59,400 bases of DNA, taken from the NCBI RefSeq assembly GCF_001194135.2, contig NC_068982.1, forward strand, positions 106,996,883 to 107,056,282. Reading direction: 5' to 3'. Shown here in pieces: positions 11,301-58,732 of the stretch. The translations under genes were made by a program, and so were the position numbers. The stretch's first letter is position 1. The number at the start of each line of letters is the position of its first letter. The notes under the pieces are model-generated. The model made no database searches, had not been told where the DNA came from, and saw only the letters and a program-made list of their open reading frames with translations. This DNA is from Octopus bimaculoides. Its lineage: Eukaryota.

Positions 11301-14300
11301 AAGAAAAATAAAAAAAAGACTGAAGCGTATTTGAAATGTGTGTATACAGTTAAAGGTAAAATTAAGCTATATGAAACCAAGATGATTTCTAAGACCATAA
11401 AAACGATTTTAGTGAAGCTTCGTTTTGATTTATTTATTTCCCAATGATTTAATACCAAATATCTTATAGATATTTTAATAATTTCCACACTACTAACCTC
11501 AACTTTAAAGTGTATATTTACACTATCCCTATCTACATTATGTTCCTGTCAAGTTGATGTCAAATTTCCATTTGATGTTCCAAAATATATTTTGTACAAG
11601 CTGAAGTCTCTAATCAAAACTTGACTTCAATTATGCAATTGGGCCCCTGACTGGTTCCATATGATGGCTAAATCTTCATAAACAAAAATTTTGCCTTTAG
11701 AAGAATACTGAATCTACATCCATCTTTCATGTAAGCTAATATGGGATGATATTTGTAAATTTAGATATATATCCAAATAGTATACATATGTATACTATTG
11801 TAATAGATTCTACAACTGATGCCCTTCCAACTGATTGCTCAACCATTATATGTAGGAGTAAAATTTGCTGTCAACATGAGTGAATGAACAAGCTGGTTGT
11901 ACCTCATCATAGCATACAAGACAAAGGCTGTGGTTAAATTTGTGCTTATATGTATGGGATGCTGCTGCAACACATACATTTTAAAATCTCAACCGAAAGA
12001 AGTTCATTCAACTGTTGGTCAATGATCCTCACCAACATTCTGCAATCACAAGCCTTGTGAGGCATAATTTCAACATTTTGCTTCTTTTATTATTATTACT
12101 ACAGCCTTGACTCTTCTGAACCAGCAAGTTGGATATCATTACCACCCAGGCCTACTTATCATTTGTATTAAATACTTCATCTAATTGTTCCTTCCTATGA
12201 CTGCAACCCCCATGGAATTTCCTCCCTATGTACACTTTTCCTGCAGACATTGACCTACAAAATGAATCTCAACCACATTAATTTCACCAGTCTGGGAGGG
12301 TTTATAAAAGCCAGAAGAACTGCCTCTCATCCGCCTTAACAGAATACCCTAGCCCAACAACTATTATATTTTAATAAGTATTTTTATTTTTTACTTACAT
12401 AACGATGGAACTCTCGGAATGAATGCAACATATAAAATCTGTGGAAATATACCACACCTGTACCACATGTATCAAATCTTCTGTGACAATGTTAAGAAAA
12501 ATAGGTTACATTAATCAAGCAAAAACAAAATGATTCTTTTCCTTATCACTTTCCTAAAATAAGAGAAAATATATTATGAAAAATAAATACGTAGATAAGA
12601 AGGTGATAAAATTTCTTAATCATTAAATGAGATGATTCCAGTTTAATCTCAAAATTATTGTGTGTAAGGAACAATGGAATCATGTACCAAAGTGTTAGTC
12701 CATTTTATGTCCACTTTTCCTGCTGGAAAGAGTTGGATGGATTGTCTAAATCAGATTTTATTTAGAGTTACTACCTTCCTAGGTGGGTTAGAGGATCACA
12801 TCTCACTCATTTTATTTTGGCTTGGTTTCAATGGCAGACAATGTGACTAGAAGGTGAGTTGATGAGAGAGCAATGACAGATGGATCAGCATAAGTGGTTG
12901 AAGGGAGCAAAGGTATCATGGTAGAAACAGAGAGCAATTGTGTGGAAGGGAATGATAGTTAGCAGTAGACAATGGCAAGAGCGAGTGATGGATATCAAGA
13001 GAAGAAGGAATGCTGATTAGCAGTAGAGAAATGGTAATGGTAAAGTGTATCAAGTACAAGTACACCAATGCAATTTCTTATACATAGGCCAAGTTATGAG
13101 AGAGTAATGAATTCTTTATTGCATTGAACACAGCTAGAGGATCATGGCAGCTAATACACATAGAACTGCTTCAAAAATCCTTCCCTCTCAGCAACAACTG
13201 TCTTGAATTCTCACCCATTCATGTTTTCCATGCAGTTGTTCTAACTAAACATTATTTTAATCTCATTAATTTCAGAGAATTTGCAAAGATCATGTGCAGA
13301 GCCACTTCTTACTCATTAAACCACAGAAAAAATATATACCTAAGCTCATTATGAACAGATCCACACCTGACATATAGATCTCATACTGCAGATAGTAAAG
13401 TATTCAATCCTAGCAGACTCCATGCCAAAACAAAGGCCATGACAACATCAGTACACAGATAATGCCATAGTGCAACTTCCACAGACAATTAATGACATGT
13501 AGACACATATGAGAATATTGCTCTACTGGCAACACAAAGTTTTGCATTAACAAGTACTCAACAGGTAGGAACCCTGTTTAGTCATTCATATATATGGATA
13601 GATGGAGGAAAATGTAAAGCACTTCCAATATCTGGGTAGTCATTTATTACAGAATGCAGATACCAATGAGATCCAACACAGAATAAAAACATACTGGTGC
13701 ACCTTTAATCATCTGGGGAGGTAGCAGTATATTTATTGTCATCATAGTTTTAACATCCAAATTTTAATGCTAGCATACTGGTTTTCAAGAATGCCAAAAC
13801 AAGGATACACAAACCCACACACAATAGATTTTTTTCCAGTTTTTGTCTACAAAGTTCACTCACAAGACTTTGGTTGAACCAAAAGCTTTAATAGAATGTA
13901 TTTGCCCAAAGTGCCATGAAGTGCAACAGAACCCAAAACCATGTAGCTGGGAAAGCAAATTTCTTAATCACAGAGACAATACTGCATTCGTAAATACCTT
14001 GTTTTTTTAAAAATGTATTTACTATCTTTTCAAACAGATGTACGAATAGCATTTTCTGTTATTAATGCTGTTGCATTATTCAACACTGGATTTGAACATG
14101 CCACATTACAAGTCAAATACATCCTCCATTCATTTTCCCCAAACCAATCTAATTGCAGCTTGAGTTTGTAGAATATAAAGTATTTTTGGGGTTTGTTTAT
14201 CTTGCAAATAAGAAAAAATATGAAGACATTATGAGCAATAGGTGCAGGAGTGGTTGTGTGGTAAGTAGCTTGCTTACCAACTACATGGTTCCGATTTCAG

Positions 14301-15061
14301 TCCCACTGCATGGCACCTGGGGCAAGTGTCTCCTACTATAGCCCTGGGCCGACGAAAGCCTTGAAAGTGGATTTGGTAGATGGAAACTGAAAGCCCATTG
14401 TATATATATGTGTGTGTGTGTGTGTGTTTGTCCCACCAACATCGCTTGACAACCGATGCTAGTGTGTTTACATCCCTGTAACTTAGTGGTTCAGCAAAAG
14501 GAACTGATTGAATAAGTACTAGGCATACAAAGAATAAGTTCTAGAGTCGATTTGCTCGTCTAAAGGCAGTGCTCCAGTATGGTCACAGTTAAATGACTGA
14601 AACAAGTAAAAGAGAATTTAAAGAACTAACCATCTCCTTTTATCATACACTGTCAATAATTATACTATATTTAGGACAAGTCAACTTTGGGTCTATGAAA
14701 TTCTTGTCAAGAAATAATGAGGCTAATGTTTATTAAGATAAATAAGAAATAAACATCATCTCAAGTCTATCAGTTGTGTTAATGCTTGAAAGGCCAATTG
14801 ATTTCACTGATAATATATGAATGAACAAGTCATAACTGACCAATCAGTTATTCTTGGAGCTCTAAAATGGTTCTTCTCTTTCATAAATTTCCACTTCAGA
14901 GTAGGTGACCTATAAGTAGGCGAAATTTAAATAATTATAATAATGAATGCTGTCTTACTAGGGAATTTACAATATATATATATATATATATATAACTAAA
15001 ACAATTCAGTAGTTGCAAACACAATTATATACATTTTTTTACAAGTTTTTTACTAGAAAAA

Positions 15062-18500: not shown

Positions 18501-19164
18501 TGGCAGAAATGGTGGCGCCCTTCCTTCCTTACGCACCCATTTGGTTATTAAACAGTGTAAGTCGAAGAAAACTTTACTTTGGCATTGGAACTAATGAGAA
18601 TTTATATATTACATTGTCTATGGCTCAATAGTTGTAGTTATTACAGTTGGATAGAAATATACCCTCCTCCCTAAAAAAAACAAAAAAAAAAAAAAAAAAA
18701 AAAAAAAACAGCAAACGACAAAAAATGATAATCTTTCTTTGAAAGCTAAAGTTTTAAAAACGATTTCTTATAACTTTCTGTAAGTACAAAAACAAATGCT
18801 GATTTTAAAAAGTTAAGCTTTTACATTTTTTTTTTAGAAATGGCTAATTAACTCCCCTTGTGATAGGGGATAGGCATTTTCTAGGAATTTCCAAACATTC
18901 GCCGAAAATGTGAACAGTATGAATCTAATCACTTTACATTTTTCTGCTTCAGTTATCTTTAAAATATTTTGTCTTATAATAATCAACAGTAATTCATTGT
19001 TTCAGTTTTCACTAATTTCCTTTTCACTTAACGACATTGTGAGTCTACAGACGTCACTCGTTGATGTTACTTCACTTTGTACCATCAAACTTGAGTGGAT
19101 TGATAGCTATTGTAGACTAAATCTAATGTATAGATTTTATTATTATTATATTTCGTCTGTCTCT

Positions 19165-19555
19165 CTGTTCTGATTTCAAATTTAGCCGAGGTCGACTTTG
19201 CCTTTCATCCTTTCGGGATTGATAATATAAGTACCAGTGAAACATTGGGGTCGATGTAAATCGACTAGTCCCCTCACCACAACACCACCAAAAATAATTC
19301 TGGCCTTGTGCCTTTAGTAGAAAAGATAATTATTGGTAAGACAGCAAGTTGGCAGAATCGTTAGCACGCCAAGCATAATGCTTAGCGGCATTTCGTCCCT
19401 CTTTACGTTCTGAGTTCAAGTTCCGCTGAGATTGACTTGGCCTTTCATCCTTTCGGGGTCGATGAAATAAGTAGCAGCCAAGCACTGGATTCCATGTACT
19501 CAACTTACCCCTCTCCAAAATTTCAGGCCTTGTACTTATAGTAGAAAGGATTATA
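19165..19555 (+). mobile_element. Two head-to-tail SINE family B copies; more at about 540-910 (-), 26190-26580 (+), 28415-28630 (+)
   Basis: Repeated GAGGTCGACTTTGCCTTTCATCC core and GTAGAAAGGATTAT tail. Confidence 0.8.
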
Positions 19556-28415: not shown

Positions 28416-28635
28416 TGTGGTGGGCTGGCAGAATCATTAGCACTCCAGATGAACTTCTTAGTGATATTTCACCTGTCACTACATTCTGAGTTCAAATTCT
28501 GCTGAGGTCAACTTTGCCTTTCACTCTTTTAGTGTCGATAAATTAAGTACCAGTGAAACACTGGGGTCAATGTAATTGACTTGTCCCCTTACTCCAAATT
28601 TCTGGCCTTGTGATTTTAGTAGAAATTATTATTAC

Positions 28636-28690
<55 letters not shown>

Positions 28691-30900: not shown

Positions 30901-33485
30901 AAGACAATATTTCCTGTGTAGGCCATAAAAAATTTCAATACTGAACAAAGCAAAAGTCATCTAACTCCAACCTGTTTCCACCATACTAATGACACTATAT
31001 TTCAATGTCTCTGTCATTACGTTGCATTAATTCTTACTGTGGTTCAACTCTCTCATCTAAATGTTAGCAGTTGAGACTTCCAAATACATTGGAATGTCTG
31101 TCCCCTTAGTTCATCTGTTGCCTCAAACATCTTTGCAAATTTCTGTAACAATCAGTTGACTATCTCTCTTCTTGCGTTGATAACATCTTACATCTCTCTG
31201 AAGTCATTATCCTCAGTACCTCAATACATACAACGCCTCTCTTAAAATGTTTCTTCCACTGCTGGAATAGAAGTTGATGTAGTCCCTTGAACACTCTGCA
31301 CTAGGAAGTCTTTACCCTTTAGGTTTTACATCAAAACTCCAAATAATTTTGGCTTCTTTTTCTCCTCTAAACCCAACCCCTTGATCAGCATCACAGTTTA
31401 TGCTTCTATTAAATTGTCTGATTGCCTAATTGCAGCAATATCTTCATTATCCTACTATATAATATTGTATTTGATTGTACATAAAATGCACTTTTTTTTC
31501 CCCAAAATATATTTCCAAAATCACCTTGAGTCCTACATGTGAAGTTGAGCCTTCCACATGCTAATTTTGTCTCTGACACTTTTTAAATCTAATTTTTATC
31601 TAGTCTCTTCTACATAGCTTGACTCCATAATAATATTTTTTTAAAGCATTATTAATATTACTTATACTGTAATGTTTTGTAATATACTACTAGGTTGCTC
31701 GATATATTACATGCTTTAATGTACTATAAACATTTTGCTTGAATATGTGTTGATGAAACTGAGGTTTGTCTAATATACCCAAGCATCTTTTATGCCATAA
31801 AATATAGGACATTTGCTTTGTAAATTATGTTTCACTTCGAGGTAGCTAATTGAGTAGCTTTTCACCAGTTCTAAGCATAGCAACCAATATACTTTACTCA
31901 TAAGTTCTCTGAGAAAGCCAGTCAGGTAACCAAAATCCTTTTTCTGTGTACCTCTCTCCCCAGTCTTCACACAACCAAACCCCATAGATCTGAATACTCT
32001 TAAGAATGTATTTGCAGCTGTACTGCAGTCTTGTAGGCAAACATTGGGAGGAAATATCATGCTATCTCTAACTTAGAAGTGGTCATCCAAGCAACATCTA
32101 TAGTGACATCTGTGTAGGAAAAATTAGGAGTATTTATGGCTGGAAGTGACAGTGAAAAGGTTGTTTATGCACAAAAGGTAGAGTATGGAAGAATTAAACA
32201 GAAGTTATATCCATATCCAAAAATTATTTAATAATCCTTAGTATCATAGAAACTATTGGTGTGAATTCATAACAGAATATTTATATTCTCTCAATATTTA
32301 TAGCTCTCGGTACCACCACGACCAAATCCTGTGCAAAAAAAGAAAAGAAAAATATTGAGCATTTTATTTTTCATCAATAACTGAGATAAGAAACTTTTTT
32401 AAAAATACAAAGATTTATAACATGATTAAGGAATGGTTATGAGTTATTAGATTCATTGAGTCAGATAACTTGAAATATATTTTGGACGAAATTATAGAAT
32501 GCCTCACCACTACCACCACCGTTGTTATTGTTTTATTTTATTTTATACATGAATATTGTGCTAAGCCCCACTTGTCCCTTGTGTTGTATTGTCCCTTTTT
32601 GTTTTGTGTTCAGCCATTGTGACCAATAAAGGAGATCAGTATTGTTGTTGTTGTTATTTTGTTTATTACTTTGATGAAACCTCTCAGCTTATTTTGCTGG
32701 GTATGATAGTAAGTGTCAGATGCTCACAGCCAGCATATATACGATAAGAACTCAGCAACTTAAAGCTGCTGCCTGGAGCAGAAACAAAATGTTGTAATTT
32801 GCAATTAAAGCTTGGTTTTTCCATCATCGTGTTGTATAACTATTTTAATTTTCATATTAATCTTATACAATAGCGGAGTTTCGCATGTTTATCTAGCTCA
32901 GGGATAAACCTAGCTGTAAGATGGTATATGGTAGCTGATGATAATATAGGAGTTTTTAAACGAAAGTCATGAGGTATCACCCTGACTGTATTCTGTCTGT
33001 CCGTCCGTCCATGCATGCATACATAGTCAAATCGAATAATCAAGTATTAGAAATAATAATAACAATCAACAAGAGCACGTGAGAATTTTTAACCTTTTGC
33101 ACATAGCTCTTCGTCAGAAAAGAAAACGGAAAAGTCCACAGAAGGAAAAATATCACCAACAGCACATGTGTAGTTACATTGCTGAAGTGACTGGAAGTGG
33201 AAAAAGATAGCGAAAGTGGTTTTTTTGGGACCGGAGAATGCAAGATGGCCAGTGTGTATGGTAGTATCTGTGTGCGTATGTGTTTGTGTTTATGTGAATG
33301 ATGTATAATACCTTCCTCACTATTTTGTTGCAGCAATTAAACATTGCTTACAAGGGAAAATAACAAACGCGAAATTTACAGAGTTATTTCCCTTCAATAC
33401 TGTTTCGCTAAATCTGAAGTTGGCTTCAAATTTTGACAAAAGGGCCTGCAATTTCAATGGGAGGTAAGTTGGTGTTACTTTGGAG

Positions 33486-33899: not shown

Positions 33900-34780
33900 A
33901 TAGCTAGAATTTTCGAAGCAGTGATGCCTTCTAACGCCGCCGTCATTTTTTCTTCACTCCTTCTACATCTGCAAGGACGAACAGAAAAAAGTCGCAGGGA
34001 GCAAGATCGGGCGAATATTGAGGGTGGTTAAGCGAGGTCATGCAATTTTTGACAAAAACTCTCACACACTCAAGGTGGTGTGCGCAGGCGCTTTGTCGTT
34101 ATGAAACCNNNNNNNNNNNNNNNNNNNNNNNNNNNNNNNNNNNNNNNNNNNNNNNNNNNNNNNNNNNNNNNNNNNNNNNNNNNNNNNNNNNNNNNNNNNN
34201 NNNNNNNNNNNNNNNNNNNNNNNNNNNNNNNNNNNNNNNNNNNNNNNNNNNNNNNNNNNNNNNNNNNNNNNNNNNNNNNNNNNNNNNNNNNNNNNNNNNN
34301 NNNNNNNNNNNNNNNNNNNNNNNNNNNNNNNNNNNNNNNNNNNNNNNNNNNNNNNNNNNNNNACATTGAATGTTTCCATTGACTTGACTGCTGTTTCGTT
34401 TCCGGGTCGTAGCCGTAGCACCAGTTTTCGTCACCAGTGATGATCTTTGAAAAAAGCTCCGTATCAAGGTCTGGACGTCCTGCAATTATCACCACTGAGG
34501 AAACCATTGATCGAGTTCACCATGTGGTTTGGATGAGAAGCGATTAACTATAAATCAGATAGCCAATGGTATTAACATATCCCGTGAGAGAATAGTGAAT
34601 ATTCTCCACAATGACAAAGTTTTCTGCTCGGTAGTTAGCTATTTAGAAATAGATGTAACGTAGTGAGGCTGATTAACATTATCAATTCATGAAACACATT
34701 CAGTCGTGGCTGATTTTAATCTTCTGTGAACAGGCGAGACACAAATTTTGCTGCAACTCTTTTCATTCGTATGTTGAATA
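33900..34780 (-). mobile_element. mariner transposase remnant spanning a gap, interrupted at 34465-34685
   Basis: MKRVAAKFVSRL, LFSKIITGDENWCYGYDPETKQQSSQWK, FHNDKAPAHT, and a decayed YSPDLAPCDFFLF-like stretch. Confidence 0.85.
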
Positions 34781-36503: not shown

Positions 36504-36648
36504 NNNNNNNNNNNNNNNNNNNNNNNNNNNNNNNNNNNNNNNNNNNNNNNNNNNNNNNNNNNNNNNNNNNNNNNNNNNNNNNNNNNNNNNNNNNNNNNNN
36601 NNNNNNNNNNNNNNNNNNNNNNNNNNNNNNNNNNNNNNNNNNNNNNNN

Positions 36649-39713: not shown

Positions 39714-39884
39714 GGTCTGTCTGCCTGTCAGTCTGTCTGAAAGTCTTTAAATACACTTAAGACTGTCTTACCTTTTGCTCCAAATTTAGATGAGTAGCAT
39801 GGATGATTGCAGTAAGGCTTGCCTTCGTGCTAAAATGAAAATAGAAATAAAAGTAAAATTAAATAAACAAAAAACAAAAAGCAG

Positions 39885-39958
39885 ACGTTTCCTTTATGCA
39901 AGGCTACGTTTCCTTTATGCAAGGCTACGTTTCCTTTATGCAAGGCTACGTTTCCTTT
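39885..39958 (+). repeat. 21-bp tandem repeat, 3.5 perfect units
   Basis: ACGTTTCCTTTATGCAAGGCT x3 plus ACGTTTCCTTT. Confidence 0.95.
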
Positions 39959-40687
39959 TTGACAGAGCTACTGTAACTTTACAGAATTGTAACAAACTGA
40001 AAGTACAATTAGAAATGTGATGTTGAAATTGCAGTCAAAAGGCGACAACATTAAACATTGTATACAGAAAAGATGTAGCGTAAAATAAAGACTCTGAATT
40101 CTTTGCTTGCATGCAATAAATACATTACTGGCATTCACTGCATTTAGACTCTTGTAGGAAAATGTTACCCATGGTAGCTAAACTTTTGGGTAGACTTGGC
40201 ATAGATTGTAGAGAACTAATTCAGAAACTGTTTTATATTTTAAAATTAAAATGCTGCAGAAACCGAGTTAAATTTCCTTCCAAAGAATATGGTACTAATA
40301 TTAATAAATATAATATATATTTGAGCCGATTCATTTGATTTTACTATACCTTACTCCTTTTCAAATCATATGTATCATACAAATTAAAGGTGAACATCTT
40401 AATTCACTTTTCGAAAAATAGTCTTCTTCCTTGCAGAAAATGTTTGAGGGGTGTATCTCGAGATTTGTAAGCATCAAGAAAATTTCAGTTGAACTATGAA
40501 ACATATAGATGTATATCATTATACCATAGTTGTACATGAAATGGTAATAGGAAGTTGTACAGTAAAGTTTATTATATTTTATTAGTTATTCATCTCTGAA
40601 ACGAAGTAACTTTTTGCCAATCAAAACAGGAACGATTTGTTTGAATTGGTTTGAATAAAACCAAACAGCGAATATTTTTATCTGATT

Positions 40688-42169
40688 TTAAAAAATCAGA
40701 GTCTTCTCATTTTCTTCTTCTAGCTTCAGAAGATTATATTTTTTCTCATCAGCAATGCATTCAGTCAAGCGGTCATCATAATCATTGTTGTCTGATAACT
40801 TGCAATCTTCGTGAATGCCGGTAGAAACAAGCACTGCACAATTCAATGTCTCATGGAATTCCTTTTCTGGAAAGTTATTTTGATGTAATCCCTCTGACGA
40901 AGGTGGTGAAGAACGACTTGATTGAAAGAAACCTTTCGTTGAACTAGAACTTAAACCTTCTCTTAAAGTTCTATCAGACCGATCGATCTTCATATTTGTT
41001 GTATTTGAAGAGGATGATGCGGAATAGTGAACATCTGGTTCAGCAGTAGGACTAGCCAGAGGTTCAGTATCTGTAAAATGATGTGAAAGTTTCGAGGGTG
41101 AAGACCTTTGAAATTCTAGAAGTTGTTGCAGGTTATTTTGAAAATCCGGAATTGCATTATCTTGTAAAGAATGCTCATTGTGATGATATTTCGTTGTATC
41201 GGAATCTTGTATATACGTTTGAGAGTTAATAGATGGTTCAGCAAATAATTTAATTGGTGGTACATGATTTTTAATAATAACATTTTTTTCATTGTTTTTG
41301 TCAATGGCATCATTTTCTCCTTCACCTTTTACATTAAGTTCTTTTTCAAACCATTGATTGAATGCTTCATCAAAAGAAAATTCTTTTTGGGACATTTTCG
41401 AAGAAGGTTCTTTTTGTGGATCAAGCTTATAACTTGTTGAATTGGTTGAATATTCTGTACAGTGACTACTTTCAAGCATTGCTTCTAAAGCTTCAAATTC
41501 CCTTAATGACACGTTTGAAATAGATTCCAGTTTAAATTCCCCTTCCTCTTCATCTTGGAAAAGGTGTGAGATTTGATTGCGAACTTGTTCGGAATCTATA
41601 GGAGGATTATCTTCTGAAATCTGATATAAGAAATAGTCAATGGATGGGTCATTTGAAGAAAAATCATCCTTAACAGATTCTAATTTTTTAGTTTTCTTAG
41701 CAAATTCGGGTCTACTTTGTAGGTCTGAAGTTACTGAAGCTTCCACATCTTTTTTTACATCATCTGAATTATTATTTTTTAGCTTATTTGAGGAAACATT
41801 TGACACATCAGAATAAAGAGAAACATTTATTTCGAAAAATACTTTAATCCAGCAAGTAAAGGTCAGCAATGCCCTCTGACTACTTGCAATAAGTTGTTCA
41901 ACTGGAATCACTTTATCTACTTTTAATACATAAAATGCGTTCTGAAGTAGTTTATAATTGGATAGATATCCCGTCGGAGAAGGATCTAATTTGATTTTCT
42001 TCCCTGCGATTATTCCTGGGTGAATTAAATTAATAAGTCGACAATAGGCTGCACCGTTTGACAGGTTGTTGATATCAGAAAAATTTGTGCGAAGTTTACT
42101 ATTTACCCAAGTTAAGAGGCTTTTTCGACCACATTCTGGAACGCGTTTCGGAATTTTCAAACGGTTCAT
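40688..42169 (-). CDS. Intronless EB1/MAPRE-like protein, 493 aa: N-terminal EB-type calponin-homology domain plus long acidic Ser-rich region
   Basis: Uninterrupted 1482-nt ORF in AT-rich DNA; AAAATG start context; aa ~14-115 align by eye with the EB1 CH domain (LLTWVNSKL, NGAAYCRLINLIHPG, NYKLLQNAF..VDKVIPVEQL, FTCWIKVFFEIN). Confidence 0.85.
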   Translation of the reverse strand: MNRLKIPKRVPECGRKSLLTWVNSKLRTNFSDINNLSNGAAYCRLINLIHPGIIAGKKIKLDPSPTGYLSNYKLLQNAFYVLKVDKVIPVEQLIASSQRALLTFTCWIKVFFEINVSLYSDVSNVSSNKLKNNNSDDVKKDVEASVTSDLQSRPEFAKKTKKLESVKDDFSSNDPSIDYFLYQISEDNPPIDSEQVRNQISHLFQDEEEGEFKLESISNVSLREFEALEAMLESSHCTEYSTNSTSYKLDPQKEPSSKMSQKEFSFDEAFNQWFEKELNVKGEGENDAIDKNNEKNVIIKNHVPPIKLFAEPSINSQTYIQDSDTTKYHHNEHSLQDNAIPDFQNNLQQLLEFQRSSPSKLSHHFTDTEPLASPTAEPDVHYSASSSSNTTNMKIDRSDRTLREGLSSSSTKGFFQSSRSSPPSSEGLHQNNFPEKEFHETLNCAVLVSTGIHEDCKLSDNNDYDDRLTECIADEKKYNLLKLEEENEKTLIF

Positions 42170-42845
42170 TTTTTTGTTTAATGAAGCTAAAATATTTAAT
42201 TCCTTTCTTTATTTCTTTTTCTTCCCTGTTATCCACTCATTCTTTATTCTTTCTTTTTCTCACCGTCTTTCCTTATACTTTCCCTTATTCTTTTGGTTTC
42301 AATTTTTAAATATTTATTTATGACGTAAACGTATTCTCGTTCTTCGTTAGATTTTCTCTTTTCGTCTATTTAGATCTTTATTTGCAGTACAATGTATTTA
42401 TGCATTGGTTCTTGATTATTCCCGGAAAATGTTGGTCTTTTCTGTTATTGTCACAGTTTTTTAAACTTTGAAATGAAGTAGAAATTTCAAATTTGGTATA
42501 TAGATGTAAATTTTCACGTTGAATCTGATTTTGATTTTTACTTGTTCCAGGAAAATTTTTGAAAAATGTTGCAGAGGTTTAAAATTTGATAATTTTTTTA
42601 CCCAATCAGAAAACAGGATTTAGAAGCTGGCATTTTGTGCGTGATAGCTGTCTATGACAACATTACGACGACAAACATGTAAGAAGTTTTGAATTTTAAT
42701 AGATTTTAATAAATAAAGTCATGTGAATTGTTGGAACAGACAATTAAAGTAAAAAAAAAAAATCCTCAATGAATTTTTTTGCGAAAAATTACAAAAATAC
42801 AAACTACGTTAAATTACATAAAACGAACAAAAAAGAAAAAGAAAA

Positions 42846-43528
42846 CTAGTTCATTTCATGTAAGCAGTTAATACATTTTTTTGTAGTAAAACTGTGGTTC
42901 GCTGTGCTTTGTAGAAAATAATAACCATCAATTTCAAGAATGTGAACGTACGACCTCCACAAGTCGCTGAAGATTGCCGTTCCTTGAAAAACCGACAGAC
43001 ATATGCATTCCTCAAGTGCGTCGCGATTCCGACATAGCACTGCATGAAGAAAAAACATACCTGGTCTCGTGACACACTCTTCTGAAGATCCACTGCTCAG
43101 GTAGCAAGTACTCTTCTTCGGTTGTATTTACGTCTTGGGAAGACTGTTTAGTCTATCTCAACAATCTTCTCAAGACCGCCTATCTGAACTGGAGCACATA
43201 TTTCACAAACATAGCTGTTGTAATCAACATCTGTGCAATGACACATCCTCAGTTCTTCAACACAAAACCGGACTGAAGTCAATTCCTTGACCCATGAGGA
43301 ATAAAATAAAAGCAGTACAGTCCTAAGAGGAAGAGTGCCACTTTCCAATTATATATCTTTTCTAACAGACATACAATCGTTACATATTTTTCGGGAGCAC
43401 CACAGTAAATTTTCCTGTGAAGCATCTTTCTTGTTCATGTGGTGTCTTTTTGTATATATTCTTTAAGTAATAACACACTTTTCTTGTAAGTAAGAAACCG
43501 CATCCTCCTCGGTTTTCAATTTCTCCAT
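42846..43528 (-). mobile_element. Merlin (ISXO2-like) transposase remnant, N-terminal two-thirds
   Basis: MEKLKTEEDAVSYLQEK..WVKELTSVRFC..IVEID*TVFPRRKYNR..GTAIFSDLWRSY..ANHS, with stops and frameshifts. Confidence 0.8.
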
Positions 43529-43608
43529 TATATTCGAAAAGTTAACCAGTTGGTTGCAGTCACATTTAGGATGAAAAGGTCCAGGAAAACACACAGTTCA
43601 AAATTATG

Positions 43609-43839
43609 GCGGCGAGCTGGCAGAACCGTTAGCACACCGGGCGAAATGCTTAGCGGTATTTCGTCTGCCCGCTACGTTCTGAGTTCAAATTCCGCCGAGG
43701 TCGACTTTGCCTTTCATCCTTTCGGGGTCGATTAAATAAGTACTAGTTACGCACTGGGGTCGATATAATCGATTTAATCCGTTTGTCTGTCCTTGTTTGT
43801 CACCTCTGTGTGTAGCCCCTTGTGGGTAGTAAAGAAATA
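43609..43839 (+). mobile_element. tRNA-derived SINE family B, young full-length insertion with 18-bp target-site duplication
   Basis: TGGCAGAACCGTTAG A box, GAGTTCAAATTCC B box, central GCCTTTCATCCTTTCGGGGTCGAT; TSD ACACAGTTCAAAATTATG at 43591-43608 and 43840-43857. Confidence 0.9.
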
Positions 43840-44565
43840 ACACAGTTCAAAATTATGAAAATGAAGTGGTGACAGGACAGCAATCGAAAATATCCATTCG
43901 TTTCTCAAAAAAAAAACCACAGATGAAAATAAATAACAAAAATGAAGTAGTACAAGCGTTCAGAAAATAGATATTTGACAAAGAAACTAGACTTGTCAAA
44001 GTAACTAGACAGGTAAAGACAATAGATATGGTAAGAGTTTTAAGCAGACTATACCTTAGTTTGTTACTATGGAAACAGAGACTCATATGTTTGTGGCTTT
44101 CGATTGATTAGAATTACTAAAAATTTGTAAACTTTAAATGCTATTAACTTTTTATTTATCAATTTGTTGCAAAAATGAATTGCATTTCCATAATTAGCAT
44201 ACAAAACTACAACAGTACACCAAATTTGAAAACAATTGGAGCAAAATTAAAAGAATTGAAAACTGTGACAGCAACAGAGAAGATCCGAACGTTGCCGAAC
44301 AACATTGACCATTTGATTTTCAAGTGTCCAAAAGAGAAATACTTCAGAATAGTTTCCCATCACCTTCTGTGGCCACCAAAGAATCTGAACTCAGGATTGC
44401 AAGCTAACAAAGCTGTTGCTAATTTTTCCAGTTTTGTTGTGAAAATATATAGTAATTACTACTTAAATTCGAATCTAGTAAGTTAAGTAATTCAGCCATG
44501 ACGAGTCAGTGGAGCTGGCACAATACAAACCAATGACTTCTATAATACATTGGTGGTCTAGAACA

Positions 44566-45455
44566 ATGTGGGTACGAGGGTGTGTTCTATGCTATGTTTA
44601 TCTTGCATAATTGACTGAAAATCCTAAGCGGTATTTCGTCTGTCTTCTGGTTCTGAGTTCAAATTCTGACGAGGTCGACTTTGACTTTCATCCTTTCGGG
44701 GTCGATAAAATATGTACCAGTTGAGTACTGAGGCCGATGTAATCGACTATCACCTCTCGCAAATTTCAGGCCTTGTGCCTTCAGTAGAAAGGATTATTTA
44801 CTCAGAAAGGGCAGCGAGCAAGCAGAATTGTATGCATGTCTGAAAAATTCTTGGCAGCACTTTTTCTTTACGTTCTAAGTTCAAATTCCCCCGAGGTCGA
44901 CTCTACCTTTCATCTTTTCGGGGTCGATAAAATAAAACCCAAGTTAAGTAGTGGAGTCGATGTGGGTACGAGGGTGTGTTCTATGCTATGTTTATCTTGC
45001 ATAATTGACTGAAAATCCTAAGCGGTATTTCGTCTGTCTTCTGGTTCTGAGTTCAAATTCTGACGAGGTCGACTTTGATTTTCATCCTTTCGGGGTCGAT
45101 AAAATATGTACCAGTTGGCTGTGTGTCAAAATCAAAAACCATTATTTACTCAGAAATTATTCTTTACAAAGCAGTTTTAGACAGATCTTAAGATTTGAAG
45201 ACATCTTCATACCTTGGGAAACTATCGACTATAATAATCCTTTCTACTAAAGGCACAAGGTCTGAAATTTGGTGGGAGGGGATAGTCGATTACATGGACC
45301 TCAGTGTTTCACTAGTACTTAATTTATTGACCCTGAAAGGATGAAAGGCAAAATTGACCTCGGCGGAATTTGAACTCAGAACGTAGCAACAGACGAAATA
45401 CCGCTAAGCATTTCACCCGGCGTGCTAACGATTCTGCCAGCGCGCCGTCTTAAAC
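44566..45455. mobile_element. Cluster of SINE family B copies (three +, one - at 45245-45455)
   Basis: Family B core repeated; includes a 158-bp near-identical direct repeat. Confidence 0.8.
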
Positions 45456-46716: not shown

Positions 46717-47460
46717 NNNNNNNNNNNNNNNNNNNNNNNNNNNNNNNNNNNNNNNNNNNNNNNNNNNNNNNNNNNNNNNNNNNNNNNNNNNNNNNNNNNN
46801 NNNNNNNNNNNNNNNNNNNNNNNNNNNNNNNNNNNNNNNNNNNNNNNNNNNNNNNNNNNNNNNNNNNNNNNNNNNNNNNNNNNNNNNNNNNNNNNNNNNN
46901 NNNNNNNNNNNNNNNNNNNNNNNNNNNNNNNNNNNNNNNNNNNNNNNNNNNNNNNNNNNNNNNNNNNNNNNNNNNNNNNNNNNNNNNNNNNNNNNNNNNN
47001 NNNNNNNNNNNNNNNNNNNNNNNNNNNNNNNNNNNNNNNNNNNNNNNNNNNNNNNNNNNNNNNNNNNNNNNNNNNNNNNNNNNNNNNNNNNNNNNNNNNN
47101 NNNNNNNNNNNNNNNNNNNNNNNNNNNNNNNNNNNNNNNNNNNNNNNNNNNNNNNNNNNNNNNNNNNNNNNNNNNNNNNNNNNNNNNNNNNNNNNNNNNN
47201 NNNNNNNNNNNNNNNNNNNNNNNNNNNNNNNNNNNNNNNNNNNNNNNNNNNNNNNNNNNNNNNNNNNNNNNNNNNNNNNNNNNNNNNNNNNNNNNNNNNN
47301 NNNNNNNNNNNNNNNNNNNNNNNNNNNNNNNNNNNNNNNNNNNNNNNNNNNNNNNNNNNNNNNNNNNNNNNNNNNNNNNNNNNNNNNNNNNNNNNNNNNN
47401 NNNNNNNNNNNNNNNNNNNNNNNNNNNNNNNNNNNNNNNNNNNNNNNNNNNNNNNNNNNN
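46717..47460. other. Assembly gap; others at 34109-34362, 36504-36648, 48264-48839, 58009-58732
   Basis: N runs, mostly bordered by microsatellites. Confidence 1.
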
Positions 47461-47509
<49 letters not shown>

Positions 47510-48231
47510 CACAAACTGATAACTGCGGCCGTCACTTGGAATCAAAGATGACGTTGCTCGTAGGCGCAGGTACCAGCTAAATGTATGTTTGGTACACATG
47601 TATATATATATGTATATACAGATAATAGAAATACACACACACATACACACGCACACACACTGTTGGTTACACGTACATAACAGAAAGAAAATATGCGCTC
47701 CTAGTTCTTTTACGATACTCGGAAAATAAGATTAAACTGTTGAGTTATCATCAATGGTATTGACTTTAGGCACTTGAAGCTGTAATACTCATGCCTTTCT
47801 TAAGTCTGTAACTGAGTAAGTGAAACAGACATAGACGAGAATCGAACCTGGATCGCAAATTCGTCTTTCCGTATACAAATCAAGGAAGTTTGAGTAATTG
47901 GATCAATGATCCATTCTTACCTCAGAATGGCTTCCAATAGTGAGTATTTTTTGACATTTCGCACATTTCAAGCAAGGTCTGTGCCAGTCTTTTCCCATTG
48001 AAGAAACTTTCTCGGCTGGAAAAGAGACAAAAAGAAATAAAAACGAAATTTAACAACATAAAAATGGAGAATAAAATTTTCGGAGCTATATGTATGTATA
48101 TTATGTATGTATGTATGTTATCAATCAGTTTAATTTCTGTATTTCTTGTCCATAGAGAAAGAGCCGGACTCTAACATAGATTCAAGGCTCCTTCATTGGA
48201 ACTTTTATCAACATCATCTATGTATTTGTGC

Positions 48232-48263
<32 letters not shown>

Positions 48264-48839
48264 NNNNNNNNNNNNNNNNNNNNNNNNNNNNNNNNNNNNN
48301 NNNNNNNNNNNNNNNNNNNNNNNNNNNNNNNNNNNNNNNNNNNNNNNNNNNNNNNNNNNNNNNNNNNNNNNNNNNNNNNNNNNNNNNNNNNNNNNNNNNN
48401 NNNNNNNNNNNNNNNNNNNNNNNNNNNNNNNNNNNNNNNNNNNNNNNNNNNNNNNNNNNNNNNNNNNNNNNNNNNNNNNNNNNNNNNNNNNNNNNNNNNN
48501 NNNNNNNNNNNNNNNNNNNNNNNNNNNNNNNNNNNNNNNNNNNNNNNNNNNNNNNNNNNNNNNNNNNNNNNNNNNNNNNNNNNNNNNNNNNNNNNNNNNN
48601 NNNNNNNNNNNNNNNNNNNNNNNNNNNNNNNNNNNNNNNNNNNNNNNNNNNNNNNNNNNNNNNNNNNNNNNNNNNNNNNNNNNNNNNNNNNNNNNNNNNN
48701 NNNNNNNNNNNNNNNNNNNNNNNNNNNNNNNNNNNNNNNNNNNNNNNNNNNNNNNNNNNNNNNNNNNNNNNNNNNNNNNNNNNNNNNNNNNNNNNNNNNN
48801 NNNNNNNNNNNNNNNNNNNNNNNNNNNNNNNNNNNNNNN

Positions 48840-56519: not shown

Positions 56520-57130
56520 TATCTAGGGCAGAGAAACAAAGACTAGAATAGGATACAAAGAACTTGTGACAAAGAAAACAGGGCGAACCCCTTGTATAAA
56601 ACCGACAAATATCAAGGAGTGATCTTTGTAGAGGCCACAGCCCATGGAGAACTAGCCCGTAGATTTAGAAAAGCTCTGAAGGAGACCAAACTCAACATTA
56701 AGATTGTTGAAAAGCCAGGGAACTCCGTCAGATCACAACTATGTAGGACATACCCCTTTAAGAATACCATATGCACCAATGATAATTGCATAGTATGTAG
56801 CATTAGCCCTGGCATTAACTGTAGAACTAGAAATGTAGTTTACAGCATAAGATGCATAGAAGGTGCTTGTAAAGACATGAACATGACATATATAGGAGAG
56901 ACATCTAGGAACATTGCGGAACGACTAAATGAGCATTTGGGACAATATGACGAAAAACATAACAGTCCTCCATACTCTACCAATATGCCAAGGACCAAAA
57001 TGGAGGCAACCTGGGTCAACTTGACTCTGCATCTTATCCAAGCACCCAAAGGACCCAACACTCAGGCAAATACAGGAGTACGTCCTCATAAATGAAACTT
57101 TCCCAATACTAAATAGGAAATATACATAGT
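56520..57130 (+). mobile_element. Penelope-like element remnant with GIY-YIG endonuclease
   Basis: YKTDKYQGVIFVEAT..NCRTRNVVYSIRC..YIGETSRNIAERLNEH, then frameshifted RQIQEYVLINE. Confidence 0.85.
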
Positions 57131-57980: not shown

Positions 57981-58732
57981 AATATTCTTTATGTTGCATG
58001 TCTCGTTTNNNNNNNNNNNNNNNNNNNNNNNNNNNNNNNNNNNNNNNNNNNNNNNNNNNNNNNNNNNNNNNNNNNNNNNNNNNNNNNNNNNNNNNNNNNN
58101 NNNNNNNNNNNNNNNNNNNNNNNNNNNNNNNNNNNNNNNNNNNNNNNNNNNNNNNNNNNNNNNNNNNNNNNNNNNNNNNNNNNNNNNNNNNNNNNNNNNN
58201 NNNNNNNNNNNNNNNNNNNNNNNNNNNNNNNNNNNNNNNNNNNNNNNNNNNNNNNNNNNNNNNNNNNNNNNNNNNNNNNNNNNNNNNNNNNNNNNNNNNN
58301 NNNNNNNNNNNNNNNNNNNNNNNNNNNNNNNNNNNNNNNNNNNNNNNNNNNNNNNNNNNNNNNNNNNNNNNNNNNNNNNNNNNNNNNNNNNNNNNNNNNN
58401 NNNNNNNNNNNNNNNNNNNNNNNNNNNNNNNNNNNNNNNNNNNNNNNNNNNNNNNNNNNNNNNNNNNNNNNNNNNNNNNNNNNNNNNNNNNNNNNNNNNN
58501 NNNNNNNNNNNNNNNNNNNNNNNNNNNNNNNNNNNNNNNNNNNNNNNNNNNNNNNNNNNNNNNNNNNNNNNNNNNNNNNNNNNNNNNNNNNNNNNNNNNN
58601 NNNNNNNNNNNNNNNNNNNNNNNNNNNNNNNNNNNNNNNNNNNNNNNNNNNNNNNNNNNNNNNNNNNNNNNNNNNNNNNNNNNNNNNNNNNNNNNNNNNN
58701 NNNNNNNNNNNNNNNNNNNNNNNNNNNNNNNN

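What the first reader, a model, noticed from the sequence alone, without database searches (positions are those of the whole stretch)
40688..42169. Intronless, highly divergent EB1-like gene: CH domain kept, EBH domain replaced
Seen: a 493-codon ORF without stops among decayed repeats, with an EB-type CH domain followed by about 375 aa of acidic Ser/Asp/Glu-rich sequence, ending LEEENEKTLIF. Established: EB1/MAPRE proteins are roughly 270-330 aa, have CH + coiled-coil/EBH + EEY/F tail, and track growing microtubule ends. Against human EB1 as I recall it, basic residues K59/K60/K62/K76/K89 appear kept, but the GKFQDN loop (K100, Q102) becomes SSQRAL. Only a faint EBH echo remains (EKKYNLLKL versus ERDFYFGKL). 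Inference: a lineage-specific retrogene that may bind microtubule lattice without tip preference or SxIP partners, possibly germline-expressed.
Basis: partly seen in the sequence, partly recalled or inferred. Interest (0 to 1): 0.7.

Follow-up and report, generated by a model that had tools for sequence, protein, structure and literature searches.

The report
Cephalopod EB-like gene without partner-binding domain
An octopus gene nested in an intron of another gene encodes a diverged copy of the microtubule-end-binding protein EB1 that keeps the microtubule-binding head but has lost the dimerising, partner-recruiting tail; it belongs to a small, undescribed, probably cephalopod-only gene family.

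Summary
The ORF is real: window 40688-42169, minus strand, 493 aa. Residues 14-116 are an EB-type calponin-homology (CH) domain (phmmer against human EB1/EB3 CH structures, E about 2e-19). A confident AlphaFold model has EB1, EB3, Bim1 and Mal3 as its 15 best PDB matches. No EBH/EB1 domain is detectable in the protein, the window or any orthologous locus.

It is not a decaying copy. Full-length orthologues exist in two other Octopus genomes and in three more distant genomes. All are uninterrupted ORFs in the same intron of a CRIP-like LIM gene, on the same strand. AATAAA lies about 105 nt after the stop in all six loci.

dN/dS is 0.33 overall in the distant clade (0.08 in the CH domain) at dS 0.7. 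Within Octopus it is 0.34-0.38 for the CH domain and 0.6-0.8 for the tail.

A tandem double-CH paralogue exists in Argonauta hians. All family CH domains group together (100/100 bootstraps). They share a rebuilt tubulin-contact loop: EB1 K100 becomes N/S, Q102 becomes R/K, N104 becomes L/I. The Mal3 mutant Q89R, at the position of EB1 Q102, is reported to lose end tracking and gain lattice binding.

Most likely function, inferred only: a monomeric microtubule binder that is not a +TIP hub. Retroposition and germline expression remain untested.

The parts
40688..42169 (-). Complete single-exon CDS (493 aa plus TAA) of the EB-like gene
   Evidence: ORF list. Orthologous 494-aa ORFs in O. sinensis (LOC118762151, 89% identity) and in a Logan contig (82% identity). 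All indels are 3 nt long.
42131..42169 (-). Basic N-terminal segment MNRLKIPKRVPEC, carrying the family motif PKRVxxCGRK
   Evidence: P7, K8, R9 and C13 are invariant across all eight family CH domains aligned. Canonical EB1 has a non-basic N-terminus here (alignment).
41822..42130 (-). EB-type CH domain (residues 14-116)
   Evidence: Pfam CH E=1.4e-9. EB1/EB3 CH structures E about 2e-19. AlphaFold model pLDDT 91.3. Top 15 Foldseek PDB matches are all EB1/EB3/Bim1/Mal3, TM 0.75-0.83. 19 of 25 columns that are >=80% conserved in canonical EBs are kept, including the K89 equivalent K86.
41858..41887 (-). Rebuilt tubulin-contact loop A95-SSQRALLT-F104, equivalent to EB1 K98-GKFQDNFE-F107
   Evidence: Column comparison with 153 canonical CH domains: K98 to A, K100 to S (N in other members), Q102 to R (R/K in all 7 family domains shown), N104 to L (L/I in all), E106 to T.
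40691..41815 (-). Acidic Ser/Glu/Asp-rich tail (residues 119-493) with no recognisable domain
   Evidence: pI 4.7, net charge -31. No Pfam hit. AlphaFold pLDDT below 50 with a 3-sequence alignment, which is uninformative. dN/dS 0.6-0.8 within Octopus and 0.37 in the second clade.
40724..40795 (-). Only tail motif conserved across both clades: SD...L(T/A)ECIAxx(K/R)KY(N/D)L (residues 459-482)
   Evidence: Alignments of the Octopus proteins with P0007, P0159 and P0160. Not significantly similar to EBH.
40568..40583 (-). Two AATAAA polyadenylation-signal candidates, 105 and 115 nt after the stop
   Evidence: AATAAA lies 103-115 nt after the stop in all six A-type loci, including the clade whose flanks do not align with Octopus.
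42170..42400 (-). Highly conserved proximal upstream region (candidate promoter/5'UTR), with the CRE-like site TTACGTCA at 42321-42328
   Evidence: Nearly identical in three Octopus loci. The 5' flank is as conserved as the CDS or more so (94.7% and 93.1% against 94.7% and 90.9%). The second clade has TGACGTCA sites at -92 and -77 inside a block conserved at dS 0.7. Function is inferred.
47921..48016 (-). Upstream exon of the host CRIP-like LIM gene (aa about 14-45)
   Evidence: tblastn with CRIP1, E=3e-13. The O. sinensis locus is annotated with a 76-aa LIM gene spanning the locus on the same strand.
39770..39829 (-). Next exon of the host CRIP-like gene (aa about 46-65), about 860 nt downstream of the EB-like stop
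   Evidence: tblastn. ag/gt boundaries are visible in the sequence. The same exon follows the EB-like ORF in L003, L006 and L007.

Best explanation
This is a functional, single-exon gene that is probably restricted to cephalopods. It descends from the EB/MAPRE family and lies, in the sense orientation, inside an intron of a CRIP-like LIM gene. It appears to carry its own promoter-proximal conserved block and its own poly(A) signal.

Shown: the product keeps a well-folded, very basic EB-type CH domain. It has lost the coiled coil, the EBH domain and the EEY/F tail.

Inferred consequences: it cannot homodimerise the EB way, cannot recruit SxIP or CAP-Gly partners, and cannot heterodimerise with canonical EBs.

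Shown: the loop that in EBs contacts beta-tubulin helix H3 is rebuilt in a family-specific, conserved way (Q102 to R/K, K100 to N/S, N104 to L/I).

Inferred mechanism: the CH domain still binds microtubules, as a monomer. It has little or no preference for the growing-end GTP cap, like the Mal3 Q89R/Q89A mutants. The long acidic, largely disordered tail tempers lattice affinity by electrostatic repulsion and carries one conserved short motif (ECIAxxKKYxL) for an unknown partner. The protein would therefore be a microtubule-surface protein, or a competitor for the EB site, rather than a +TIP hub.
For: Gene reality and constraint:
- Full-length orthologues occur in six genomes of two deep clades. 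All are uninterrupted and sit in the same CRIP intron on the same strand.
- Every CDS indel is a multiple of 3. Of the 22 flank indels scored across the two comparisons, only one is.
- The chance of keeping the ORF open under neutrality is 0.03-0.06 for 79 substitutions and 0.003-0.009 for 135 substitutions.
- Within Octopus, dN/dS is 0.34-0.38 for the CH domain and 0.6-0.8 for the tail.
- In the second clade, at dS 0.71, dN/dS is 0.33 overall, 0.08 for the CH domain and 0.37 for the tail. The excess of synonymous changes has P=4e-17.
- AATAAA lies 103-115 nt after the stop in all six loci, and upstream blocks are conserved.

Domain content:
- EB-type CH by sequence and by fold.
- No EBH by Pfam, by a local HMM, by hhalign, or by six-frame search of the window and seven loci.
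- No SxIP motif in the A-type proteins.

Family:
- All family CH domains are monophyletic in 100 of 100 NJ bootstraps against 56 canonical EB CH domains.
- The loop signature is shared by every member.

Mechanistic leads from the literature:
- EB1 K89E abolishes tubulin binding (PMC7240100). The K89 equivalent is kept here.
- EB1 K100E/Q102E impairs microtubule binding (PMC5042579).
- Mal3 Q89E loses end tracking. Q89A and Q89R bind the whole lattice more strongly (PMC3368265).
- Monomeric CH-linker fragments bind weakly, and the acidic C-terminus of EBs repels the lattice (PMC3154886).
- The tandem-CH paralogue supplies two CH domains without a coiled coil, as a dimer would. Second-clade orthologues keep an EB-like basic linker after the CH domain.
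Against: - There are no expression data and no binding data of any kind.
- Within Octopus the constraint is weak. For the window against O. sinensis, tail dN/dS is 0.83 and is not distinguishable from neutrality (P=0.35). CDS nucleotide identity equals that of the 5' flank.
- Octopus has lost the basic linker, and several EB basic residues are gone (K66, K83, R84, K95, K98, K100). Together with a tail of net charge -31, microtubule affinity could be very low, or the CH domain may have another ligand.
- The whole H3-contact loop is changed, not only Q102, so single-residue Mal3 phenotypes may not transfer.
- Oligomeric state is not known. The full-length structure prediction was uninformative.
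- The organisms behind the second clade (SRR9969974, ERR3431203, ERZ21867824) could not be identified. 'Cephalopod-restricted' rests on the two named sources (Octopus sinensis, Argonauta hians), on the shared CRIP synteny, and on the lack of closer hits elsewhere.
Confidence: 0.55

Rival explanations
1. A neutrally drifting retro-pseudogene or chance ORF that happens to be still open.
For: It is intronless and surrounded by transposon debris. For the window against O. sinensis, tail dN/dS is 0.83 (P=0.35). CDS identity (94.7%) equals that of the 5' flank.
Against: The ORF is intact in six genomes, including a pair at dS 0.71 with dN/dS 0.33 (P=4e-17) and CH dN/dS 0.08. Indels are in-frame only. 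The neutral open-ORF probability is 0.003-0.06. Start, stop, poly(A)-signal position and an upstream block are conserved.
Confidence: 0.04
2. The ORF is not a separate gene. It is an alternative exon of the host CRIP-like gene or of a longer EB gene whose EBH exon lies elsewhere.
For: It is on the same strand as CRIP and lies between two CRIP exons. A possible ttttag acceptor lies 19 nt upstream of the ATG.
Against: An in-frame stop lies 13 codons upstream. Splicing from the phase-0 CRIP exon into that acceptor would read CTT CAT TAA, an immediate stop (sequence). The Met start (M-N/S-R-L) and the stop are conserved in both clades. The O. sinensis annotation lists it as its own 494-aa product. 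No EBH-coding sequence is found in 59 kb of window or in seven loci. A poly(A) signal lies about 105 nt after the stop in all loci.
Confidence: 0.08
3. A real gene, but the CH domain has been re-purposed. It no longer binds microtubules and serves as a protein-protein or actin-binding module. The conserved family-specific loop and N-terminal PKRV-CGRK motif would be the new interface.
For: The most conserved EB tubulin-contact loop is rebuilt and then conserved in its new form in all family members. Residues conserved in most canonical EBs are replaced: N104 (92%), E106 (78%) and Q102 (74%). Several basic residues are lost. CH domains are versatile binding modules (PMC7240100).
Against: K89, K59/K60/K62 and K76 equivalents and 19 of 25 conserved EB columns are kept. 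The domain is even more basic than EB1's. The structural neighbours are exclusively EB CH domains, and actin-binding CH domains match far worse (E>=0.02, TM about 0.5-0.6). Second-clade orthologues keep a basic linker, and the paralogue has two CH domains in tandem; both are arrangements that favour microtubule binding in EBs.
Confidence: 0.25
4. A still competent, autonomous plus-end tracker, that is, a minimal monomeric EB. It would compete with canonical EBs at growing ends and so act as a dominant-negative regulator of +TIP recruitment.
For: Monomeric CH-linker EB3 and Mal3 fragments can recognise ends (PMC3154886 and PMC3368265). An acidic C-terminal part favours tip over lattice. The CH fold and K89 are kept.
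Against: The Q102 position is R/K in all members, and the equivalent Mal3 Q89R loses end tracking. K100 and N104 are also replaced. Monomeric fragments of Drosophila EB1 and Bim1 do not track at all.
Confidence: 0.12

Closest known systems
EB1/EB3 (MAPRE1/3; yeast Bim1, Mal3), the canonical end-binding proteins
   Same: N-terminal EB-type CH domain: 35-38% identity, E about 2e-19, TM 0.8, RMSD 1-2 Å. K89, K59/K60/K62 and K76 equivalents are retained. The overall layout is a basic head plus an acidic C-terminal part.
   Different: No coiled coil, no EBH domain, no EEY/F tail. The loop GK(F/Y)QDN(F/L)EF is replaced by xN/SxR/KxL/ILxF. The protein is 493 aa, against 268 aa for the human EB1 chain in PDB. 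The gene is a single exon nested in another gene.
Engineered Mal3 Q89R / Q89A (the EB1 Q102 position) and EB1 K100E/Q102E mutants
   Same: A natural substitution of the same Gln by Arg or Lys, with loss of the neighbouring Lys. The mutants show that this contact decides end tracking against lattice binding.
   Different: Those are single or double changes in dimeric full-length EBs. Here the whole loop differs and the protein lacks the dimerisation domain, so the phenotype is a lead and not a result.
Monomeric CH-linker fragments (EB3-NL, EB1-NL, Mal3-143)
   Same: A CH domain without EBH-mediated dimerisation. Weak microtubule affinity and no partner recruitment are expected.
   Different: Those are artificial truncations with the native loop and a basic linker. 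The Octopus protein has no basic linker and carries a 375-aa acidic tail.
Tandem-CH paralogue: Argonauta hians hypothetical protein GAB1598528.1 (P0006), and P0005
   Same: Same CH subfamily (100/100 bootstraps), same PKRVxxCGRK motif and same loop signature. Also intronless and also lacking EBH.
   Different: Two CH domains in one chain and no long acidic tail. It lies at a different locus, not flanked by CRIP exons in the fetched DNA.
Other lineage-specific EB-type CH proteins without an EB1 domain, e.g. an uncharacterised 658-aa protein of Drosophila takahashii (P0102) and a Balamuthia 'mal3' of 689 aa (P0044)
   Same: N-terminal EB-type CH domain followed by a long tail with no Pfam EB1 hit. 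Loss of EBH has therefore happened elsewhere.
   Different: They are not close relatives: about 65-73 bits against 137-205 bits within the cephalopod family. I did not examine their loops individually.

Membership tests
EB / MAPRE (RP/EB) family | N-terminal EB-type calponin-homology domain | tested here: met
   Pfam CH E=1.4e-9. Only EB-family chains are hit in PDB, best E=1.8e-19. AlphaFold pLDDT 91, and the top 15 Foldseek hits are all EB1/EB3/Bim1/Mal3. Caveat: the alignment used for modelling contained EB sequences.
EB / MAPRE (RP/EB) family | C-terminal coiled coil plus EB-homology (EBH) domain (Pfam EB1, PF03271) | tested here: not met
   No PF03271 hit at E<=10, nor in P0005, P0006 or P0007. 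A local HMM built from 67 EBH domains scores 0.1 bits or less. hhalign probability 0.1-0.4%. No EBH exon in six-frame searches of the window and seven loci. For comparison, 63 of the 97 sequences in alignment A4 outside the cephalopod family do hit PF03271.
EB / MAPRE (RP/EB) family | Acidic C-terminal EEY/F tail (CAP-Gly ligand) | tested here: not met
   The protein ends ...EEENEKTLIF. The terminal F is preceded by hydrophobic residues, not acidic ones. Second-clade orthologues end ...EEHVKCQS.
EB / MAPRE (RP/EB) family | Conserved tubulin H3-contact loop GK(F/Y)QDN(F/L)EF, including Q102 | tested here: not met
   The loop is SSQRALLTF in the window protein. Q102 is R/K and N104 is L/I in all family domains, whereas canonical EBs have Q in 113 of 153 and N in 141 of 153.
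EB / MAPRE (RP/EB) family | Lys89 and the basic patch K59/K60/K62/K76 | tested here: met
   K86, K57, K58, K60 and K73.
EB / MAPRE (RP/EB) family | Autonomous tracking of growing microtubule ends | not testable with these tools
   Requires TIRF reconstitution or live imaging.
Processed retrogene | CDS uninterrupted by introns | tested here: met
   A contiguous ORF in the window and in all orthologous and paralogous loci.
Processed retrogene | Intron-containing parental gene in the same genome, with collinear mRNA-derived sequence | not tested
   The canonical octopus MAPRE gene was not retrieved. That metazoan MAPRE genes are multi-exonic is background knowledge, not a result obtained here.
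Processed retrogene | Remnant poly(A) tract and target-site duplications | tested here: inconclusive
   No A-tract follows the AATAAA in the sequence read. No search for target-site duplications was made. At this age (CH domain only 58% identical between clades) such marks would be erased.
Cephalopod EB-like CH family (proposed here) | PKR(V)xxCGRKxLxxW N-terminal motif, the N-x-(R/K)-x-(L/I)-L-x-F loop, and no EBH | tested here: met
   Alignments A2 and A3 and the column table. Monophyly in 100 of 100 bootstraps.

The most novel reading that the evidence does not exclude
Cephalopods evolved and kept a private family of intronless EB-derived proteins with two forms: single CH plus acidic tail, and tandem double CH. 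In both, the nucleotide-state-sensing glutamine is fixed as Arg/Lys and the +TIP hub domain is gone. That would make them natural 'lattice-mode' EBs. They would bind the inter-protofilament corner site independently of the GTP cap, and so act as structural MAPs or as competitors of canonical EBs in microtubule-rich cephalopod cells such as giant axons or sperm flagella. They would be driven by their own CRE-containing promoter inside the CRIP intron.
Probability: 0.25. Interest if true: 0.55.

Novelty: new variant of a known kind. Interest (0 to 1): 0.42.

Why it matters
EB proteins are the central adaptors of the microtubule plus-end network, and their CH + EBH architecture is conserved from yeast to humans.

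This family keeps the CH fold under purifying selection. It has discarded the hub domain and rewritten the loop that reads the tubulin nucleotide state. It therefore offers a ready-made comparison for what determines tip recognition against lattice recognition. The substitution is the same one that changes Mal3 behaviour in the laboratory.

It is also a clear case of a long-lived gene nested in the sense orientation within an intron. Its position is conserved across deep cephalopod divergence, and it adds to the list of cephalopod-specific cytoskeletal genes.

The practical stake is modest. It is a candidate for a short biochemical study, not a new principle. EB-type CH proteins without EBH have also arisen in other lineages.

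Tried and rejected
- Full-length AlphaFold with the 3-sequence alignment gave pLDDT 31 and says nothing about the tail.
- The search for homologous proteins with the CH-domain alignment A2 collected only 550 candidates and did not even recover known members, so that search was wasted.
- The full-length query in that tool was swamped by low-complexity words and found only the orthologues plus one weak hit.
- Searching papers for the run, assembly and gene accessions (SRR9969974, SRR11869384, ERZ21867824, LOC118762151) found nothing. The species of the second clade stay unidentified.
- Literature searches for a described cephalopod EB-like family, or for EBH-less EB paralogues, found none.
- EBH remnant hypothesis: both HMMER and hhalign place ERKYNFLKL / ECIAxxKKY on ERDFYFGKL, but with scores at chance level. 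It is rejected as evidence of homology.
- C-terminal F as an EEY/F equivalent is rejected because it is not conserved in the second clade.
- SxIP motifs in the tail, which would make it an EB client: none in the A-type proteins.
- CRIP-EB-like fusion through the ttttag acceptor is rejected, because it reads straight into a stop.
- ORFs just upstream (42846-43348, minus strand) looked transposase-like by eye but gave no Pfam hit.
- A first NJ/bootstrap script timed out and was redone with 65 sequences.
- The Logan contigs L002, L003 and L007 are not transcript evidence. L003 and L007 contain CRIP intron plus exon, and L002 runs 749 nt past the stop, well beyond the AATAAA.
Full report
**Observation**

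The window holds a 493-codon ORF at 40688-42169. It is on the minus strand; the plus-strand translation is full of stops. An in-frame stop lies 13 codons upstream of the ATG.

Pfam finds a CH domain at residues 14-104 (E=1.4e-9) and nothing else credible. It finds no EB1/EBH domain (PF03271) even at E<=10. phmmer against all PDB chains returns only EB-family CH domains. Human EB1 and EB3 score E about 2e-19 over residues 14-116, Bim1 1.6e-10 and Mal3 2e-6.

EB1 K59, K60, K62, K76 and K89 are kept as K57, K58, K60, K73 and K86. GKFQDN is replaced by SSQRAL.

The tail (residues 119-493) is Ser/Glu/Asp-rich, with pI 4.7 and net charge -31. The CH part is very basic, with pI about 10 and net charge +11.

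An AlphaFold model of residues 1-126, built with a 103-sequence alignment, is confident (pLDDT 91.3, pTM 0.86). Its 15 best Foldseek matches in PDB are all EB1, EB3, Bim1 or Mal3 CH domains (TM 0.75-0.83). Actin-binding CH domains follow only at E>=0.02. The alignment contained EB sequences, so the model leans toward that fold.

**Is it a gene?**

Two near-identical-length orthologues were found. One is Octopus sinensis LOC118762151, annotated 'uncharacterized protein', 494 aa, 89% identical. The other is a 494-aa ORF on a Logan contig from run SRR11869384, 82% identical.

Within Octopus the evidence for constraint is real but modest:
- Nei-Gojobori dN/dS is 0.34-0.38 for the CH domain and 0.61-0.83 for the tail, at dS 0.07-0.16.
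- The excess of synonymous changes is significant for the two more distant pairs (P=0.006 and P=0.013). It is not significant for the window against O. sinensis (P=0.11; tail alone P=0.35).
- CDS nucleotide identity (94.7%) equals that of the 5' flank.
- All three CDS indels in each comparison are 3 nt long. Of the 22 flank indels scored across the two comparisons, only one has a length that is a multiple of 3.
- Simulated neutral substitution keeps the ORF open in only 3-6% of trials for 79 changes and 0.3-0.9% for 135 changes.

**The decisive evidence comes from further away**

An exhaustive HMMER search of 1.84 billion representative proteins, using the three-orthologue profile, found 1218 hits at E<=1e-3. 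Only four clusters reached E<=1e-30. The scores then drop to canonical EBs at 88 bits or less. The three new clusters are:
- P0007 (632 aa): one CH domain plus a long acidic tail.
- P0005 (443 aa) and P0006 (415 aa): two EB-like CH domains in tandem. P0006 is Argonauta hians hypothetical protein GAB1598528.1.

A further search from P0007 added P0159 (657 aa, 90% identical) and P0160 (691 aa, 60% identical). P0160 comes from the same ENA assembly (ERZ21867824) as the tandem-CH protein P0005, so both forms coexist in one genome. All are uninterrupted ORFs in genomic DNA.

In the window, tblastn with CRIP1 finds exons of a CRIP-like single-LIM gene on the minus strand at 47921-48016, 39770-39829 and 32294-32329. 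The EB-like ORF therefore sits in a CRIP intron, in the sense orientation. This matches the O. sinensis annotation of a 76-aa LIM gene spanning the locus.

The same CRIP exon follows the EB-like ORF by roughly 840-1130 nt on the same strand in L003, L007 and L006, and L006 also has the upstream exon. Outside about 90 nt of the CH domain, this second clade no longer aligns with Octopus at the nucleotide level. CH identity between the clades is 58%. The nested arrangement is therefore old.

Within the second clade, at dS=0.71, dN/dS is 0.33 overall, 0.08 in the CH domain and 0.37 in the tail (P=4e-17).

The start (M-N/S-R-L-x-x-PKR) is conserved. AATAAA lies 103-115 nt after the stop in all six loci. 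A proximal upstream block is conserved within each clade. It carries the CRE-like site TTACGTCA at -159 in Octopus. In L003 and L007 it carries two TGACGTCA sites at -92 and -77, which are degenerate in L006.

I read this as a compact, independently transcribed unit. That reading is inference; I have no expression data.

**What has been lost**

None of the family proteins hits Pfam EB1. A local HMM built from 67 canonical EBH regions scores 0.1 bits or less on them. hhalign of the C-terminal alignment against the EBH alignment gives 0.1-0.4% probability. tblastn and six-frame HMM searches find no EBH-coding sequence in the 59-kb window or in any of the seven loci.

That segment, SD...L(T/A)ECIAxx(K/R)KY(N/D)L, is nevertheless the only tail motif conserved between the two clades. 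It probably matters for some function.

The terminal ...TLIF is not conserved in the second clade, so it is not an EEY/F equivalent. The A-type tails contain no SxIP motif.

**What has been changed**

All family CH domains form one group in 100 of 100 NJ bootstraps against 56 canonical EB CH domains. This includes A-type proteins and both domains of the tandem proteins. They share an N-terminal PKR(V)xxCGRK motif.

Of the 25 columns that are at least 80% conserved in canonical EBs, the window protein keeps 19, including the K89 equivalent.

The loop that in EBs reads GK(F/Y)QDN(F/L)EF is rebuilt and then conserved in its new form:
- K98 becomes A/D/G/E.
- K100 becomes N (S in the window protein).
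- Q102 becomes R or K in every member.
- N104 becomes L or I in every member.
- E106 becomes T or a hydrophobic residue.

Published work gives these positions meaning:
- EB1 K89E abolishes tubulin binding (PMC7240100).
- EB1 K100E/Q102E impairs microtubule binding (PMC5042579).
- Mal3 Q89 aligns with EB1 Q102 by my reading of the CKMQDNLEF and GKFQDNFEF motifs. It contacts beta-tubulin helix H3. Q89E loses end tracking, whereas Q89A and Q89R bind the whole lattice more strongly and lose end preference (PMC3368265).
- Monomeric CH-linker fragments bind weakly, and dimerisation strengthens binding. The acidic C-terminal part of EBs repels the lattice (PMC3154886).

**Most likely mechanism (inferred)**

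The protein is a monomeric microtubule-binding protein that uses an EB-type CH domain in a 'lattice mode', with little or no preference for the GTP cap. It cannot dimerise through EBH, recruit SxIP or CAP-Gly partners, or pair with canonical EBs. Its acidic tail tempers binding and presents one conserved short motif to an unknown partner.

Two family features fit a microtubule function. The second-clade orthologues keep a strongly basic linker after the CH domain, as EBs do. The paralogue supplies two CH domains in one chain, as a dimer would.

Against this reading, Octopus has lost the basic linker and several basic residues, and its tail is only weakly constrained. Affinity could therefore be low, or the CH domain could have acquired another ligand. 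I give that rival about 0.25.

**Other rivals**
- A neutral pseudogene is excluded for practical purposes.
- 'An exon of a larger gene' is unlikely. Start and stop are conserved, there is an upstream in-frame stop, splicing from CRIP into the only nearby acceptor gives an immediate stop, no EBH exon exists nearby, and the poly(A) signal is conserved.
- A still-competent minimal tip tracker is possible but disfavoured by the Q-to-R/K change.

**Retrogene origin**

The gene and all its relatives are intronless. That is what retroposition would give. I did not retrieve the canonical octopus MAPRE gene for comparison. I saw no poly(A) tract after the AATAAA. At this age such marks would have decayed. 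The claim is plausible but unshown. Germline expression has no evidence for or against it. CRE-like sites are only a hint of a regulated promoter.

**Novelty**

The O. sinensis orthologue exists in NCBI only as a predicted 'uncharacterized protein'. I found no paper describing it or a cephalopod EB-like family.

EB-type CH proteins without an EB1 domain do occur in other lineages. Examples are an uncharacterised 658-aa Drosophila takahashii protein and a 689-aa Balamuthia protein. Loss of EBH is therefore not unique.

I rate it a new variant of a known kind, of moderate interest. It is a natural experiment on the EB nucleotide-sensing contact and a long-lived sense-nested gene, not a new principle.

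**Limits**
- The organisms behind SRR9969974, ERR3431203, SRR11869384 and ERZ21867824 are unknown.
- 'Cephalopod-restricted' rests on the two named sources, the shared CRIP synteny and the absence of closer hits.
- The trees are NJ only.
- No expression, binding or oligomerisation data exist.

Noticed in passing
window 47921-48016, 39770-39829, 32294-32329 (minus strand): Exons of a CRIP-like single-LIM-domain gene (about 76 aa in O. sinensis) that hosts the EB-like gene in one of its introns, in the sense orientation. The first exon (aa 1-13) was not located. Two assembly gaps flank the 47.9-kb exon.
   Followed up: partly
L004 10001-11248 (Argonauta hians, GAB1598528.1); L005 10001-11332 (ENA ERZ21867824): An intronless paralogue with two EB-like CH domains in tandem and no EBH domain. 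It coexists with the single-CH form in at least one genome. It looks like a covalent 'dimer' replacing coiled-coil dimerisation.
   Followed up: partly
window 42321-42328 and 42170-42400 (minus strand); L003/L007 about -92 and -77 from the ATG: CRE/ATF-like sites sit in a conserved block just upstream of the ORF in both clades: TTACGTCA in Octopus, and two TGACGTCA in the second clade. The 5' flank is as conserved as the CDS or more so.
   Followed up: partly
window 40568-40583 (minus strand) and the equivalent positions in L001, L002, L003, L006, L007: AATAAA lies 103-115 nt after the stop in all six orthologous loci, although the flanks of the two clades do not align. A sense-oriented poly(A) signal inside the host intron means CRIP transcription must read through it.
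   Followed up: partly
L003 about 530-700, L006, L007 (protein residues about 117-200 of P0007, P0159, P0160): Second-clade orthologues carry a strongly basic linker (KNKERFRRKERTGKRRKK...) right after the CH domain. The Octopus proteins lack it.
   Followed up: no
window 34109-34362, 36504-36648, 46717-47460, 48264-48839, 58009-58732: Runs of N (assembly gaps), mostly bordered by di- or trinucleotide microsatellites. They explain the apparent GC troughs in the composition profile.
   Followed up: yes
window 39885-39958: A perfect 21-nt tandem repeat (3.5 copies, ACGTTTCCTTTATGCAAGGCT) about 60 nt upstream of the CRIP exon's acceptor. It accounts for the RFLYARL-repeat ORF on the plus strand.
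   Followed up: no
window 1165-2436 (minus strand): A 423-aa open frame rich in Gln and Pro (polyQ, PPPPP runs) with no Pfam hit. It could be an exon of a low-complexity protein gene or a chance ORF in simple sequence.
   Followed up: no
window 8382-8912 (minus strand); 56592-57092 (plus strand); 19149-19507, 28424-28689, 43604-45454; 2513-2897, 6383-6760, 14240-14624: Transposon debris: a pogo/Tigger-type DDE_1 fragment (E=4e-15), a GIY-YIG fragment (E=5.5e-6), and two families of short interspersed repeats. One of the two repeat families also matches the Argonauta locus at 80-90% identity.
   Followed up: partly
P0102 (Drosophila takahashii, 658 aa), P0044 (Balamuthia mandrillaris, 689 aa), P0039, P0112: Other long proteins with an N-terminal EB-type CH domain and no Pfam EB1 domain, so EBH loss has occurred independently in other lineages. 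Some other hits (DNMT3/PWWP or WD40 fusions) look like gene-model artefacts.
   Followed up: partly
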